Assembly: GCF_032444005.1 (NCBI RefSeq)
Contig: NC_091291.1
Location: 27,032,001-27,096,000 of the forward strand
Origin: Ranitomeya imitator
Lineage: Eukaryota
DNA length: 64,000 nt
Reading direction: 5' to 3'
Shown piece after piece: positions 1,182 to 16,300 of the stretch; positions within the stretch are counted from its first letter, which is position 1; the number at the start of each line of letters is the position of its first letter. The position numbers were made by a program, and so were the translations under genes. Below the pieces are notes generated by a model. The model had not been told where the DNA came from, did not search any database, and saw only the letters and a list, made by a program, of their open reading frames with translations.

Positions 1182-1315
1182 TTGAAGAACCTAGGAGTAA
1201 GCAGAGTGTTCCTTCTTGTTTTTCTGATAATTGTGTTCATCATCTGGCAGACCACAATACTGATAAAGAAAGCAGAGTAGCAGTACCACTCCTGGTTGAG
1301 ACGCTGGACGTAGGT
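1182..1315 (-). CDS. ATPase exon 20 ([45 protein letters not shown])
   Basis: 134 nt, acceptor tttgtag, donor gtgagt, TM8 and RKTRRN motif. This frame is not in the supplied ORF track. Confidence 0.9.
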
Positions 1316-4300
1316 CTACAAATCAGAGATGAGATCATACAGGTTAATTTTTGTAAATAAGCTATTTTGCCAAGAAAGGTACTAAAGTGATGTTGTGAAG
1401 CTAGATAGTAAAGTCTATACTGGGCACAAATCAATAACTTATGGTTTAACCCCTTCATGACCCAGCCTATTTTGACCTTAAAGACCTTGCCGTTTTTTTC
1501 AATTCTGACCAGTGTCCCTTTATGAGGTAATAACTCAGGAACGCTTCAACGGATCCTAGCGGTTCTGAGATTGTTTTTTCGTGACATATTGGGCTTCATG
1601 TTAGTGGTAAATTTAGGTCAATAAATTCTGCGTTTATTTGTGATAAAAACGGAAATTTGGCGAAAATTTTGAAAATTTCGCAATTTTCACATTTTGAATT
1701 TTTATTCTGTTAAACCAGAGACATATGTGACACAAAATAGTTAATAAATAACATTTCCCACATGTTTACTTTACATCAGCACAATTTTGGAAACAAAATT
1801 TTTTTTTGTTAGGAAGTTATAAGGGTTAAAATTTGACCAGCGATTTGTCATTTTTACAACGAAATTTACAAAACCATTTTTTTTAGGGACCACCTCACAT
1901 TTGAAGTCAGTTTGAGGGGTCTATATGGCTGAAAATACCCAAAAGTGACACCATTCCAAAAACTGCACCCCTCAAGGTACTCAAAACCACATTCAAGAAG
2001 TTTATTAACCCTTCAGGTGCTTCACAGCAGCAGAAGCAACATGGAAGGAAAAAATGAACATTTAACTTTTTAGTCACAAAAATTATCTTTTAGCAACAAT
2101 TTTTTTATTTTCCCAATGGTAAAAGGAGAAACTGAACCACGAAAGTTGTTGTGCAATTTGTCCTGAGTACGCTGATACCTCATATGTGGGGGTAAACCAC
2201 TGTTTGGGCGCACGGCAGGGCTTGGAAGGGAAGGAGCGCCATTTGACTTTTTGAATCAAAAATTGGCTCCACTCTTTAGCGGACACCATGTCACGTTTGG
2301 AGAGCCCCCGTGTGCCTAAAAATTGGAGCTCCCCCACAAGTGACCCCATTTTGGAAACTAGACGCCCCAAGGAACTTATCTAGATGCATAGTGAGCACTT
2401 TGAACTCCCAGGTGCTTCACAAATTGATCCGTAAAAATGAAAAAGTACTTTTTTTTCACAAAAAAATTCTTTTAGCCTCAATTTTTTCATTTTCACATGG
2501 GCAACAGGATAAAATGGATCCTAAAATGTGTTGGGCAATTTCTCCTGAGTACACCAATACCTCACATGTGGAGGTAAACCACTGTTTGGGCACATGGTAA
2601 GGCTCGGAAGGGAAGGAGCGCCATTTGACTTTTTGAATGAAAAATTATTTCCATCGTTAGCGGACACCATGTCGCGTTTTGAGAGCTCCTGTGTGCCTAA
2701 ACATTGGCGCTCCCCCACAAGTGACCCCATTTTGGAAACTAGACCCCCCAAGGAACTTATTTAGATGCCTAGTGAGCACTTTAAACCCTCAGGTGCTTCA
2801 CAAATTGATCTGTAAAAATGAAAAAGTACTTTTTTTTCACAAAAAAATTCTTTTCGCCTCAATTTTTTCATTTTCACATGGGCAGTAGGATAAAATGGAT
2901 CATAAAATTTGTTGGGCAATTTCTCCCGAGTACGCCGATACCTCATATGTGGGGGTAAACCACTGTTTGGGCACACGGCAGGGCTCGGAAGGGAAGGCGC
3001 GCCATTTGACTTTTTGAATGGAAAATTAGCTCCAATTGTTAGCGGACACCATGTCGCGTTTGGAGAGCCCCTGTGTGCCTATGCATTGGAGCTCCCCCAC
3101 AAGTGACCCCATTTTGGAAACTAGACCCCCCAAGGAACTTATCTAGATGCATATTGAGCACTTAAACCCCCAGGTGCTTTACAGAAGTTTATAACGCAGA
3201 GCCATGAAAATAAAAAATAATTTTTCTTTCCTCAAAAATGATTTTTTAGCCTGGAATTTCCTATTTTGCCAAGGATAATAGGAGAAATTGGACCACAAAT
3301 ATTGTTGTCCAGTTTGTCCTGAGTACGCTGATACCCCATATGTGGGGGTAAACCACTGTTTGGGCGCACGGCAGGGCTCGGAAGGGATGGCACGCCATTT
3401 GGCTTTTTAAATGGAAAATTAGCTCCAATCATTAGCGGACACCATGTCACGTTTGGAGAGCCCCTGTGTGCCTAAACATTGGAGATACCCCAGAAATGAC
3501 CCCATTTTGGAAACTAGACCCCCAAAGGAACTAATCTAGATGTGTGGTGAGGACTTTGAACCCCCAAGTGCTTCACAGAAGTTTATAACGCAGAGCCATG
3601 AAAATAAAAAAAAAAATTATTTTCTCAAAAATGATCTTTTAGCCTGCAATTTTTTATTTTACAAAGGGTAACAGGAGAAATTTGACCCCAAAAGTTGTTG
3701 TCCAGTTTCTCCTGAGTACAATGATACCCCATATGTGGGGTTAAACCACTGTTTGGGCACATGCCGGGGCTCGGAAGTGAAGTAGTGACATTTTGAAATG
3801 CCGACTTTGATGGAATGCTCTGTGGGCGTCACGTTGCGTTTGCAGAGCCCCTGATGTGGCTTAACAGTAGAAACCCCCCACAAGTGACCCCATTTTGGAA
3901 ACTAGACCCCGAAAGGAACTTATCTAGATGTGTGGTGAGCACTTTGAACCCCCAAGTGCTTCATAGAAGTTTATAATGCAGAGCCGTGAAAATAATAAAT
4001 ACGTTTTCTTTCCTCAAAAATAATTATTTAGCCAAGAATTTTTTATTTTCCCAAGGGTAACAGGAGAAATTGGATCCCAAAAGTTGTTGTCCAGTTACTC
4101 CTGAGTACGCTGATACCCCATATGTGGGGGTAAACCACTGTTTGGGCACATGCCGAGGCTCGGAAGTGAAGTAGTGACGCTTTGAAATGCAGACTTTGAT
4201 GGAATGCTCTGTGGGCGTCACGTTGCGTTTGCAGAGCCCCTGATGTGGCTTAACAGTAGAAACCCCCCACAAGTGACCCCATTTTGGAAACTAGACCCCG

Positions 4301-13300: not shown

Positions 13301-16300
13301 CAGCACACAGTAGCACAGCACACATTCCCTTGGAAAGTATCTAATACATGAATCAGCCAGGTCCTCCGGAAGAGAAAACCCTCTTATAAAGAAGATTCCA
13401 AAGGGACATCCGTATACCCTTCTAGAACATATGGACAGGATGTTTTTGTGAGACAGCACCACAGTTCACTTGCATATAGGTAGGATATATAAATGAATAT
13501 TTACCTTGTTGATGAGAACTTCTTCTTGATCAGCACAGAATTCAGCTCGGTTACACAGGGTGGCAATTTTAGCCAGTGATTCCCAAGTTGGGGAGCTTTG
13601 ATCAAACTTTTCACCTGAACAGAAAAACAATTATCAATGGTTACCTTTGTATTCCTCAAAAAATGTTTTGTGTGATGTTCGGAATCCCATTATCTACCTT
13701 CTAATGTCAAGAGATTAATAGGCCCTTACCTGTCTGTTCTTCACTGGTATCTGCATTGTGGATGAGATTGTCAAACCACATATGTGACACAGTCATCCGG
13801 TTCTGGGTTAGGGTCCCAGTTTTGTCAGAGCAGATGACTGAGGTGGACCCCAGAGTCTCCACAGCTTCCAGGTTCTTTACCAGACAATTCTTCTTTGCCA
13901 TGCGCTTTGCAGTCAAGGACAGGCAAACCTGTAGGGCACATATTAGATTAGGAAGGCCGTGAAGTTTTAAAAGAAGCTTGCATCAAAGACAAATGCATAA
14001 TGAGTTCATTAACATGTTATACTCACTGTTACAGTTGCTAGTAGTCCTTCAGGCACATAAGCTACCACGATGCCAATGCAGAATATTATAGCATCGAGGG
14101 GACTATATCCCATGCAGATGGAAATAATGAAGAAAACTACGCCAACGCCTACTGCAAGACCACTGATCAAGTGCACAAAGTGCTCGATCTCCAAGGCAAT
14201 GGGTGTCTTCTGGTTACCAACTTGTGAGGCCAGTGATGCAATACGCCCAATGACTGTACGGTCACCTGTGTTAATTGCTATACCAGACGCTGTCCCTGTA
14301 AAGTAAGCATAAAATATTAGACCAGATTTAGTGACCTTTACCAAATGCATATCATCTTATGTATCTCTACTTTGTACATGAAGTAAAGGATATGAACTAG
14401 GGAAACCTCAAATTGTGATTTTTAGCTCACCTTCCAAGCAGGTTGTAGAAAAGAAGCCCAAATTTCTTGTCTCTAGAGGGTTATCATCGGTACATTCCAT
14501 GCCACGAGGTTGTGCTTCTGATTCACCGGTGAGGGATGAGTTGTCAACCTGCACATCAAAATTATAAATCTTTCTTATGACGTAATGGTTTCCAAGATTT
14601 CATCAAACTCCCTAGCATGAGCTTTACAGAACGCAAAATTGTTTTCTTTATTCTTCTCACCTTGCAACCATGACTCTCAAATATACGTATGTCAGCCGGG
14701 ATTTTATCGCCTCCTTTAATAAAGACGATGTCCCCGGGAACAAGGTTCTCCGCTAGCATCTCGATACGTTTCCCATCTCGAAGAACCAAAGCTTGCTAAA
14801 TCAAGAAAGAAATGTATTAAAAACAACGCTCATCGACTATCATTCTACAAATTTATAGTAGTAACGCTTCTTACCTGAGGCACCATATTCTTAAAGCCAG
14901 CCATAATGTTGGTACTTTTGGCTTCTTGATAATATGCAAAGAGGGCCGTCAACACAACCACTGCAATCAGGATGATCGCCAACCAGAGCTAAAGACGTGG
15001 AAGAATTATAGGTAAAAAAAATACATAAAGGATTGAACCACAGCATCCACTCGACCTAAGATCTAAATCAAAATCTAACGGTTTTCTTACATTATCTTTA
15101 GAAACCGTAGGGTCTTGGGCAGCTTGAAGCCCATATGCCAGAAAGCACAATCCAGACGCAATCCAAAAGACAATGGCGAATCCTCCGCCCATGAGCATCA
15201 AAAATTTCACAATTTCAGGGGTTCCTTTTGGAGGTGAGAGTTTGTTAGGTCCATCTCGGGCTAAAATTTCCTGAGCAGCTGATGTGCTCAAACCCTTGAA
15301 AGAAAAACACAATTGATAAAATATTGTACACCCTTTTATACTTTACTGTACCAATAGATGGATTGATACATGAGATCATAAAATAAGCTTTCATCATTGT
15401 GTTAGAGATATGTCCACTTTGGGCAATCTCCCGGAATTCCATCCCAATCCGGGGAAGAACATTTCCAATTCATCTACAATGCCACCACAGGTGAAATTAA
15501 ATATTACACAGCTTCCAATGAAATGAAAAAGCTGTCCTTGTAACAAATGGATATGCCAGATCTTCTAGAGTGAAGGGCAGGCTTTTGTATCTACTCCATT
15601 AGCTCCAACTACTAGTTAAGAGTCCAGGATGATGGAGCGCTTTCTTCTAACTCAGAATTACTATAAAAAAAAACAGTTTTTGAAAACATGTTTTCTAGAT
15701 GAAGAAACCTTCTTGCAAACTGACCTGTTTGATATCTACTGAGTATTTCTTTTGTAGTTCTTCTATACTCAGCTTATGTTCGGTCTAGAAAAAAAAATGG
15801 TCATTTCATATTACCAAACCTCCTAATATCTGTATTTTATTGTATCAGCATTAATTTTCTATCACTTACAATCTCTAGCTCCTTTTTCAATTTTTCTACT
15901 TTGTTAGTATTCTTTCCTTTTATCCCTGACAATATGTTACTCTTGGTTTTCTCTTTTTCTGGTTTTTGATTCATGGGGATGGTGTAAATGTCGGATGGCT
16001 CCTGTTGAAGGAAAGAGATGGTAAAAAGTCTGGATATTACATTTACAATCGCTCAGCATGATTATTGCACTGGTGTGCCTTAGGCTGATCACAATAAAAG
16101 GCCACTCTACAATATGCAGATTTACAGTATTGGTGGGATCTGGGGAGGTCAGAAAACCAGTCAGTATCTGGTTTGATCACCATTTGCCTCACGCCCTGCA
16201 ACACATCTCATTAGCATAGATTTGATCAGGTTGTTGATTGTGGCCTATGGAAAGTTGGTCCACTCCTCGTCAATGGCTGTGCGATGTTCTTGCATGGCCA

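What the first reader, a model, noticed from the sequence alone, without database searches (positions are those of the whole stretch)
1182..14295. Divergent H,K-ATPase paralog with a mosaic cation-binding pocket
Seen in sequence: TM4 VAYVPE, TM5 [12 protein letters not shown]6 [16 protein letters not shown]8 [10 protein letters not shown], then IIRKTRR. Established (pig gastric numbering): Y340, K791, P794 with E820 are the gastric ATP4A states, whereas ATP12A has N, K, A, D. However, the gene lacks gastric C813, C822, Y799 and E936 and has T, G, F, V like ATP12A/ATP1A, and it has ATP12A-like AKSVG. All catalytic motifs and the exon phases are intact. Inference: this is neither a plain ATP4A nor a plain ATP12A ortholog. 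It may be a separate amphibian P2C pump lineage with different ion selectivity, stoichiometry or drug sensitivity.
Basis: partly seen in the sequence, partly recalled or inferred. Interest (0 to 1): 0.8.

Follow-up and report, generated by a model that had tools for sequence, protein, structure and literature searches.

The report
Third lineage of vertebrate H,K-ATPase
This intact frog gene encodes the catalytic subunit of a proton/potassium pump that is neither the stomach pump (ATP4A) nor the colon/kidney pump (ATP12A). It belongs to a third, old sister lineage found in frogs, salamanders and bichir fishes, which databases label only as "ATP12A-like" and which nobody appears to have tested.

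Summary
The N gap lies in an intron and does not touch the coding sequence.

The genome (Ranitomeya imitator) also has canonical ATP4A, ATP12A and ATP1A1-3 genes elsewhere. This gene is one of at least three intact tandem copies, with pseudogenes beside them.

In a careful ML tree the copies fall in a clade ("X") of "alpha chain 2-like" proteins from about 30 frogs, 3-4 salamanders and two polypterid fishes (100/99). That clade lies outside monophyletic ATP12A (100/99) and ATP4A (100/100). X is sister to ATP4A (97/98; AU p=0.035 against X+ATP12A), but this link disappears when the membrane segments are removed.

The "mosaic" pocket is invariant across X. It shares Y340, E820 and C938 with ATP4A, and keeps ancestral F799, T813, G822 and V936. 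It also has its own M796 and, in frogs and bichirs, D942N.

The likeliest function is a Na+-independent, electroneutral H+/K+ exchanger that proton-pump inhibitors do not block. This is inferred, not tested.

dN/dS between two copies is 0.22. Spliced transcripts were seen only for a sister copy. I found no paper describing this lineage.

The parts
17668..17706 (-). Coding exon 1 (ATG; [13 protein letters not shown]), followed by donor GTACGT
   Evidence: It matches the N-terminus of the R. variabilis ortholog P0287.
15870..16001 (-). Coding exon 2 ([16 protein letters not shown]...KELEI)
   Evidence: The acceptor is ttccttcaacag|G.
15725..15784 (-). Exon 3 (60 nt)
15091..15294 (-). Exon 4 (204 nt; TM1, with lineage-specific [14 protein letters not shown])
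14875..14988 (-). Exon 5 (114 nt; TM2)
14661..14795 (-). Exon 6 (135 nt)
14431..14548 (-). Exon 7 (118 nt; TGES motif)
14027..14295 (-). Exon 8 (269 nt; TM3-TM4, VAYVPEG = Y340/E343 in pig numbering)
13730..13928 (-). Exon 9 (199 nt; DKTGT phosphorylation site)
   Evidence: The splice joint is seen in the transcript contig of paralog F.
13505..13614 (-). Exon 10 (110 nt)
12054..12188 (-). Exon 11 (135 nt)
11765..11957 (-). Exon 12 (193 nt; KGAPE)
11503..11678 (-). Exon 13 (176 nt; DPPR)
11281..11417 (-). Exon 14 (137 nt; MVTGDHP, AKSVG)
10956..11106 (-). Exon 15 (151 nt)
10712..10880 (-). Exon 16 (169 nt; [17 protein letters not shown])
8473..8627 (-). Exon 17 (155 nt; TM5-TM6: K791, P794, E795, M796, F799, T813, E820, G822, D824)
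8154..8277 (-). Exon 18 (124 nt)
7893..8038 (-). Exon 19 (146 nt; TM7, ends SYGQEW)
5943..6092 (.). Assembly gap inside the intron between exons 19 and 20; it has no effect on the coding sequence
1182..1315 (-). Exon 20 (134 nt; TM8: V936, C938, Q939, N942, R946). Exons 21-23 lie left of the window at G000:C10:27031810-27031709, 27031370-27031279 and 27027658-27027633.

Best explanation
The gene is a functional member of a third vertebrate H,K-ATPase alpha-subunit lineage, here called X. X is distinct from gastric ATP4A and non-gastric ATP12A. It is present in anurans, salamanders and polypterid fishes and is tandemly expanded in dendrobatid frogs. The window gene is copy C of at least three intact copies. 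Shown: gene integrity, lineage membership, separateness from ATP4A and ATP12A, clade-wide invariance of the pocket, and purifying selection. Inferred mechanism: like both known H,K pumps it keeps the TM5 lysine (K791), whose amine replaces one cation, so it should exchange H+ for K+ electroneutrally. It shares with ATP4A the Y340 and E820 states that restrict the gastric pump to one K+ at site II. It keeps the ancestral V936, so it lacks the gastric E936-D824 hydrogen bond. It also lacks Y799, C813 and C822, so covalent proton-pump inhibitors, which need C813/C822, should not act, and P-CAB binding is probably weakened. In frogs and bichirs the site-III aspartate (D942, equal to NKA D926) is replaced by Asn. 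In the known HKA structures this Asp is neutralised by a salt bridge to R946. The substitution hard-wires that neutralisation and should abolish any Na+ site III. In evolutionary terms the mosaic is an intermediate state. X has the substitutions shared with ATP4A (Y340, E820, C938) but none of the later gastric-specific ones.
For: The gene model is intact: 23 GT-AG exons, 1040 aa, all catalytic motifs. It scores 1739 bits on TIGR01106 against a cut-off of 946. Canonical ATP4A-, ATP12A-, ATP1A3-, ATP1A2-like genes and two ATP1A1-type genes lie elsewhere in the same genome and nest in their expected clades. Careful ML tree of 56 rows and 1037 columns: X plus polypterid genes 100/99, ATP12A 100/99, ATP4A 100/100, X+ATP4A 97/98. 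The AU test gives p=0.035 against X+ATP12A. The pocket is invariant in 36 X rows and 2 polypterid rows. Of 23 X-diagnostic residues, 9 are shared with the polypterid genes. dN/dS between copies C and D is 0.22, with dS 0.19. A 1.6-kb spliced contig in two public runs uses exactly the predicted exon borders and matches paralog F at 18 of 18 discriminating sites. Structural roles come from the literature. E936 hydrogen-bonds D824, and Y340 and E820 shape the single K+ site (PMC8481561). Asp945-Arg949 form a salt bridge in both HKAs, and the NKA alpha3 D923N mutation lowers Na+ affinity more than 100-fold without changing K+ affinity (PMC9463140).
Against: No functional data exist for any X member in the literature I could search. 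Expression of copy C itself was not shown: the transcript contig came from copy F, and the small runs hold only 0.15-0.17 of the sampled words. The X+ATP4A sister relation rests on the membrane segments. With TM3-4, TM5-6 and TM8 removed the node is still recovered but with SH-aLRT of only 4, and the AU p of 0.035 is marginal. Pairwise identity is slightly higher to ATP12A (69%) than to ATP4A (65%). Salamander X genes keep D942, so the Asn is not essential to the lineage. Neighbouring copies B and E are pseudogenes, so the cluster is turning over.
Confidence: 0.75

Rival explanations
1. It is only a fast-evolving, amphibian-era duplicate of ATP12A, as the automatic name 'alpha chain 2-like' implies. 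On this view its ATP4A-like pocket residues arose by convergence.
For: Identity is highest to ATP12A (69% against 65% for ATP4A). X and ATP12A lie on the same chromosome-scale record in many frogs, judged by matching contig lengths. Support for X+ATP4A collapses to SH-aLRT 4 when pocket-bearing segments are removed. The AU p of 0.035 is not overwhelming.
Against: ATP12A is monophyletic with sharks, bichirs, lungfish, amniotes and amphibians at 100/99, and X lies outside it. Bichirs have both a canonical ATP12A and an X-type gene, and the X-type gene still groups with amphibian X at SH-aLRT 98 without pocket columns. The split is therefore older than tetrapods whichever lineage is the sister. 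X keeps P794, as do NKA and ATP4A, whereas all ATP12A sequences and the lamprey have A794.
Confidence: 0.15
2. Copy C is a recently redundant, silent tandem duplicate on its way to becoming a pseudogene. Only another copy, such as F, would then carry the function.
For: The cluster holds a truncated pseudogene (B), a multiply disrupted one (E) and two dispersed pseudogenes. The only spliced transcript evidence belongs to F. The RefSeq model of C borrows a distant duplicated exon 2 and a transposon-derived first exon.
Against: C has no stop or frameshift in 3120 nt and all 22 introns are GT-AG. dN/dS between C and D is 0.22. C has a 94%-identical one-to-one counterpart in Dendrobates tinctorius, so it has been kept since before those genera split. 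All pocket and catalytic residues are conserved.
Confidence: 0.08
3. X is a functional pump with a substantially different transport reaction from both known H,K pumps, for example two K+ per cycle, NH4+ or Na+ as a substrate, or electrogenic transport.
For: V936 and F799 are two of the five positions whose Na-pump-like states were needed to create a second K+ site in gastric HKA (PMC8481561). The X-specific M796, I/V797 and M800 line TM5 next to the sites, and N942 alters site III.
Against: K791, E820 and Y340, the three positions that directly fill or shape site I, are in the gastric state in every X member. In ngHKA, electrogenic or Na+-dependent behaviour required removal of the lysine (PMC9463140). 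N942 argues against Na+ binding at site III.
Confidence: 0.2

Closest known systems
Gastric H,K-ATPase alpha (ATP4A; pig structures 5YLU, 6JXH)
   Same: Same P2C fold and exon structure. Shares K791, N792, P794, E795, Y340, E820, D824, C938, Q939, R946 and the C-terminal ..ELYY. It is the sister clade in the full-length tree (97/98).
   Different: X lacks the gastric-specific E936, Y799, C813 and C/A822, and the PF09040 gastric N-terminal domain. It has M796, I797, M800 and, in frogs and bichirs, N942. Identity is 65%. A separate bona fide ATP4A exists in the same genome.
Non-gastric H,K-ATPase alpha (ATP12A; rat structure 7X20; Bufo bladder pump)
   Same: Shares K791, F799, T813, G822, V936 (amphibian, shark and bichir ATP12A), R946 and the AKSVG motif. 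Pairwise identity is highest here (69%). Databases name X after it.
   Different: ATP12A has N340, A794, C797 and D820, and usually E or Q at 938, in all 29 sequences checked. X has Y, P, I/V, E and C. ATP12A is monophyletic without X (100/99). A separate canonical ATP12A exists in the same genome.
Na,K-ATPase alpha (ATP1A1-3)
   Same: Same family (TIGR01106). Shares the ancestral states P794, F799, T813, G822 and V936, and the Q111/N122 positions of the H1-H2 loop.
   Different: NKA has S at 791, N at 340, D at 820, W at 940, D at 942 and C at 946. X has the H,K-type K791 and R946 and sits in the H,K clade (100/100, stem 0.41).
Engineered gastric HKA mutants with Na-pump-mimetic substitutions (K791S/E820D/Y340N/E936V/Y799W; PMC8481561)
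   Same: X naturally carries E936V and a non-Tyr residue at 799, two of the five engineered positions.
   Different: X keeps K791, E820 and Y340, so the space for a second K+ should remain closed. X has Phe, not Trp, at 799.

Membership tests
P2C (Na,K/H,K) P-type ATPase alpha subunit | Full-length match to TIGR01106 above the curated cut-off, plus Pfam Cation_ATPase_N, E1-E2_ATPase, Cation_ATPase, Hydrolase and Cation_ATPase_C | tested here: met
   1739 bits against a cut-off of 946. All five Pfam domains are present. Tested on P0289, the RefSeq product of this gene, which is identical to my model apart from the first coding exons.
P2C (Na,K/H,K) P-type ATPase alpha subunit | Catalytic motifs [35 protein letters not shown] and the cation ligands E343, E795, D824 | tested here: met
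H,K-type subclade (ATP4A, ATP12A and lamprey) | Lys at TM5 position 791 in place of the NKA Ser, Arg at 946 in place of Cys, and placement in the H,K clade | tested here: met
   K791 and R946. The H,K clade has 100/100 support.
ATP4A ortholog (gastric pump) | Nests within the ATP4A clade and is the genome's ATP4A locus | tested here: not met
   ATP4A is monophyletic at 100/100 without X. The genome's ATP4A-type gene is at C10:7.35 Mb and groups with Dendropsophus ATP4A.
ATP4A ortholog (gastric pump) | Gastric-specific residues E936, Y799, C813 (omeprazole site), C/A822, and the PF09040 N-terminal domain | tested here: not met
   X has V, F, T and G. PF09040 is found in frog ATP4A P0379 but not in P0289.
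ATP12A ortholog (non-gastric pump) | Nests within the ATP12A clade and is the genome's ATP12A locus | tested here: not met
   ATP12A is monophyletic at 100/99 without X. The genome's ATP12A-type gene is at C10:140.3 Mb and groups with D. tinctorius ATP12A. The AU test disfavours X+ATP12A at p=0.035.
ATP12A ortholog (non-gastric pump) | N340, A794, C797 and D820, invariant in 29 ATP12A sequences | tested here: not met
   X has Y, P, I and E.
Lineage X ('alpha chain 2-like' of amphibians and polypterids) | Signature Y340, K791, P794, M796, F799, T/A813, E820, G822, V936, C938, plus TM1 L89/F98 and TM2 A138 (L89, F98 and A138 are numbered from the Met at window 15974), and clade membership | tested here: met
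   The window gene is 94% identical to the D. tinctorius member, 83% to the X. tropicalis member and 76% to the axolotl member.
Lineage X | K+-dependent, Na+-independent ATPase or transport activity with a beta subunit | not testable with these tools
   No experimental data were found.

The most novel reading that the evidence does not exclude
X is an ancient third H,K-ATPase that split from the gastric pump lineage before bony fishes and tetrapods diverged. Because shark and ray sequences sit inside ATP12A and ATP4A, the split probably predates crown gnathostomes. X has survived only in amphibians and polypterids. It preserves an intermediate stage in the evolution of the gastric pump, with K791, Y340 and E820 in place but E936, Y799 and C813 not yet acquired, and it adds a hard-wired neutral site III (N942). 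It would therefore be a natural experiment on how a 1H+:1K+ stoichiometry and a steep pH gradient evolved. It may also be an unrecognised, PPI-insensitive acid/K+ transporter of amphibian skin, bladder or embryonic epidermis that has been conflated with atp12a in Xenopus and poison-frog studies.
Probability: 0.35. Interest if true: 0.75.

Novelty: new variant of a known kind. Interest (0 to 1): 0.62.

Why it matters
Textbooks and recent reviews list two vertebrate H,K-ATPase catalytic subunits. A third, conserved over more than 400 million years and under purifying selection, would add a pump to amphibian ion and acid physiology in skin, bladder, kidney and embryonic epidermis.

Its pocket is a natural combination of exactly the residues that structural biologists mutate to convert H,K pumps into Na,K pumps. 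Measuring its stoichiometry, K+ affinity, pH limit and drug sensitivity would test those models directly.

There is also a practical consequence. [quoted passage not shown] Published 'atp12a' expression results in Xenopus and poison frogs may therefore refer to either gene.

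Tried and rejected
(1) I tried to build a full-length query by aligning exon translations to a full-length scaffold (P0166) with MAFFT. The fragments were scattered across the scaffold, so I discarded the alignment. I reached full-length relatives in two steps instead, P0002 then P0186.

I therefore could not fetch the rest of copy F, the full ATP4A and ATP12A loci, or the flanks of the cluster. 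The canonical paralogs are known only from 3.2-kb loci covering 288-472 aa.

(3) Synteny: the X. tropicalis ortholog locus with 10-kb flanks holds no neighbouring gene, and the Polypterus protein is not on record. Micro-synteny is untested. Only chromosome-level co-location could be inferred, from matching contig lengths.

(4) Expression of copy C: the spliced contig found in runs X1 and X2 belongs to copy F. A second run search gave only DNA holders and small shares. Tissue and species labels are coded, so no tissue can be assigned.

(5) Literature: I searched for atp12a.1, atp12a.2, atp12a-like, atp4a-like, HKalpha3 and ATP12B, and for ATP4A+ATP12A+ATP1A1+phylogenetic+Xenopus. No paper described a third lineage. 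The library does not hold most subscription journals, so this is not proof of absence.

(6) Considered and rejected: an assembly artefact or chimera, because the exon structure is identical in copy D and orthologs exist in about 35 species; and a missing exon in the N gap, because the junction is gapless against orthologs.

Full report
WHAT IS THERE. The feature lies on the minus strand. Stop-to-stop translation showed a complete series of P2C ATPase exons from about 16.0 kb down to 1.18 kb. I wrote a spliced protein-to-DNA aligner that requires GT-AG introns and models all three phases. With an unrelated full-length Na,K-ATPase (P0166) as guide it returned a gene with internal exon sizes of 60, 204, 114, 135, 118, 269, 199, 110, 135, 193, 176, 137, 151, 169, 155, 124, 146, 134, 102 and 92 nt plus a 26-nt end. 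The intact paralog D has the same exon sizes.

The last three exons (TM9, TM10, C-terminus ..DKELYY, TGA) lie 0.2-4.4 kb left of the window. I read them from the genome. Comparison with orthologs added a short first coding exon (window 17706-17668, [13 protein letters not shown], donor GTACGT) and extended exon 2 to 16001. The final model has 23 coding exons, 22 GT-AG introns, 3120 nt, 1040 aa and no internal stop. The finding's end coordinates are exact exon borders.

THE GAP. The N run at 5943-6092 lies in the roughly 6.6-kb, repeat-rich intron between exon 19 (ending SYGQEW) and exon 20 (starting [10 protein letters not shown]). The junction is in frame. It is gapless against paralog D, whose intron there is 1.6 kb with no extra exon, and against the RefSeq protein of this gene. 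The gap affects only the intron length.

GENOMIC CONTEXT. The window is G000:C10:27032001-27096000 of a 5.96-Gb genome. [quoted passage not shown] It is identical to my model apart from the first coding exons.

A search of the genome with the TM3-4 exon found a tandem cluster on C10:
- Copy B (26.998 Mb) is a truncated pseudogene.
- Copy C is the window gene.
- Copy D (27.123-27.134 Mb) is intact, with a 1018-aa aligned product.
- Copy E (27.206-27.227 Mb) has many stops.
- Copy F (27.262 Mb) is intact over the nine exons I could read.
- Two dispersed pseudogenes lie at 77.72 and 77.76 Mb.

The same search found single loci whose translations are typical ATP4A (C10:7.35 Mb), ATP12A (C10:140.3 Mb), ATP1A3 (C10:15.07 Mb), ATP1A2-like (C1) and two ATP1A1 genes (C3). 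The genome therefore has the full standard set plus this family.

RELATIVES. A fragmentary R. imitator model (P0002) led to a 711-aa family member (P0186, equal to copy F). I used P0186 as the query against the 5.8-billion-protein collection. The best hits, at 75-93% identity, are all named 'alpha chain 2-like' or are unnamed. They come from about 30 anuran species spanning Bombina and Discoglossus to Neobatrachia, and from Lissotriton, Pleurodeles and Ambystoma.

The next hit is a reedfish protein at 72% (P0323), whose 90% cluster also holds a Polypterus senegalus protein. Canonical ATP12A (68-70%) and ATP4A (66-68%) follow. A search with the reedfish protein found no closer fish relative. 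No caecilian, lungfish, amniote, teleost or shark protein appeared above the canonical genes. This is a soft absence, because only annotated proteins and 8000 candidates were scored. [quoted passage not shown] It has therefore been conflated with atp12a.

PHYLOGENY. I built a careful IQ-TREE tree (LG+C20+F+G4 PMSF) of 56 rows and 1037 columns, rooted on invertebrate pumps. It gave:
- ATP1A: 99/91.
- An H,K-type clade: 100/100, stem 0.41.
- A lamprey sequence at the base of that clade.
- ATP12A, with sharks, bichirs, lungfish, amniotes and amphibians: 100/99.
- ATP4A, with a ray, ray-finned fishes, reptiles and amphibians: 100/100.
- Clade X, with polypterids, salamanders and anurans in species-tree order: 100/99.

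The R. imitator ATP12A-type and ATP4A-type fragments nest beside their D. tinctorius and Dendropsophus orthologs. X is sister to ATP4A at 97/98. Forcing X+ATP12A costs 19 lnL units, with AU p=0.035.

As a control for convergence I removed TM3-4, TM5-6 and TM8 with their flanks (203 residues). X with the polypterids (98), ATP4A (100) and ATP12A (99) stay monophyletic. X+ATP4A is still recovered, but with SH-aLRT of only 4. The existence of a third lineage and the orthology of the bichir genes are therefore robust. Which of the other two lineages is its sister depends on the membrane segments.

Within X, copy C pairs with a D. tinctorius protein (94% identity). In the 74-row quick tree copy D pairs with one R. 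variabilis protein and a second R. variabilis protein joins them. Copy F was not in either tree, but that second protein (P0286) is its closest hit at 93% identity. C and D therefore separated after Anomaloglossus branched off but before Ranitomeya and Dendrobates split.

THE POCKET. I mapped positions to pig ATP4A numbering through the motifs, with K791-N-I-P794-E795-L-T-P-Y799 and the TM6 and TM8 motifs as anchors. All 36 X rows and both polypterid rows have Y340, E343, K791, N792, P794, E795, M796, F799, T or A at 813, E820, G822, D824, V936, C938 and Q939. All anurans and both polypterids have N942, while salamanders keep D942. R946 is kept in all rows except X. laevis, which has His.

The comparison groups read as follows:
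- ATP4A (17 rows): Y340, P794, Y799, C813, E820, C or A at 822, E936, C938, D942.
- ATP12A (29 rows) and the lamprey: N340, A794, F799, T813, D820, G822, mostly V, T or M at 936, D942.
- Na,K pumps: N340, S791, P794, F799, T813, D820, G822, V936, D942.

The mosaic therefore breaks down into four parts. There are ancestral states (P794, F799, T813, G822, V936). There is the H,K-wide K791 and R946. There are states shared only with ATP4A (Y340, E820, C938). And there are X-specific states (M796, I/V797, M800, N942). A scan for diagnostic columns found 23 X-specific residues, concentrated in TM1, TM2 and TM5, of which nine are shared with the polypterid genes. AKSVG is indeed ATP12A- and X-like, since ATP4A has Ala at the Lys position.

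HOW IT PROBABLY WORKS (inference). The structural literature gives these roles:
- K791 occupies the space of one cation.
- E820 and Y340 shape the single K+ site II of the gastric pump.
- E936 hydrogen-bonds D824 and turns it away from position 791.
- Y799 sits at the luminal gate (PMC8481561).
- In both known H,K pumps the site-III Asp (Asp945 in ngHKA, 942 in pig numbering) is salt-bridged to the Arg four residues on.
- The equivalent D923N mutation of human NKA alpha3 lowers Na+ affinity more than 100-fold without changing K+ affinity (PMC9463140).

X keeps K791, E820 and Y340. The most likely reaction is therefore electroneutral H+/K+ exchange with one K+ at site II. V936 frees D824, which may change the pKa network and the attainable pH gradient. 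N942 makes site III permanently neutral, which argues against any Na+ transport. From established pharmacology, absence of C813 and C822 predicts insensitivity to covalent proton-pump inhibitors, and F799 and T813 probably weaken P-CAB binding. None of this was tested.

IS COPY C ALIVE? It is intact, and its Nei-Gojobori dN/dS against copy D is 0.22 (dN 0.042, dS 0.19). It also has a one-to-one counterpart in another genus.

Public runs gave a 1640-nt contig (runs X1 and X2) that skips the introns exactly at the predicted borders, with CT..AC ends on the plus strand at all but one joint. That one joint (exons 13/14) was reported a few bases off, with TA..AT ends. At 18 of 18 sites that distinguish the copies over exons 9-12 the contig matches copy F. 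Over all 32 sites it matches copy D at only 19 and differs from C at every one. The family is therefore transcribed and spliced as modelled, but expression of C itself is not shown. The coded run labels give no tissue.

WHAT IS KNOWN. In the searchable library, recent reviews and phylogenies list only ATP4A and ATP12A beside ATP1A. Searches for alternative names found nothing relevant. 'atp12a' is reported as a goblet-cell marker in Xenopus embryonic epidermis and as differentially expressed in poison-frog skin. Those papers do not say which of the two loci is meant. These are leads, not evidence.

VERDICT. The gene itself is already annotated automatically. What appears new is its recognition as a third H,K-ATPase lineage with a defined, informative pocket.

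Noticed in passing
G000:C3, loci L008 (about 6.09 Mb) and L009 (about 5.87 Mb): Two ATP1A1-type genes lie 217 kb apart. L008 has the sensitive H1-H2 loop ..GIQAATEEEPQNDNLYL. L009 has ..GIRSATEDEPQNDDLYL, that is Q111R plus N122D, the classical cardiotonic-steroid-resistance pair. This suggests a sensitive/resistant paralog pair in a dendrobatid frog.
   Followed up: no
window 9346-10368 (+): An intact 340-aa Tc1/Sleeping-Beauty-type transposase ORF (Pfam HTH_SB, HTH_Tnp_Tc3_2, DDE_3) lies inside the intron between exons 16 and 17 of the pump gene.
   Followed up: partly
window 25812-25952 (-) and 26132-26251 (-): An isolated duplicate of coding exon 2 lies 10 kb upstream of the gene. It is preceded by an ORF resembling the C-terminal tail of a Tc1 transposase (..[19 protein letters not shown]..). 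RefSeq model XP_069599048.1 uses these two as its first coding exons instead of the proximal exons 1-2, which gives a 1064-aa product. A degenerate copy of the same transposase-tail ORF, with a stop, also lies just upstream of the proximal exon 2 at about 16176-16295.
   Followed up: partly
G000:C10:26997791-27000204 (copy B), 27205811-27226590 (copy E), L012/L013 at 77.72-77.76 Mb: These are pseudogene copies of the same pump family. B keeps only about the first ten exons, with defects. E has many stops and frameshifts. The two dispersed copies also carry stops. An older R. imitator annotation (CAJ0934262.1, P0002) is a chimeric model whose N-terminal half closely matches copy B by eye.
   Followed up: partly
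window 12240-13320: The intron between exons 10 and 11 holds a very high-copy repeat. Word depths reach the hundreds to thousands in all four runs laid, including runs labelled as other organisms.
   Followed up: no
one search hit table (Hyperolius riggenbachi P0426 1444 aa, P0428 1801 aa; Nanorana, Leptobrachium, Hymenochirus with 2-4 entries): Other frogs also show several X-type entries, or over-long fused models, on one record. This suggests that tandem duplication of this gene is recurrent in anurans and not confined to dendrobatids.
   Followed up: no
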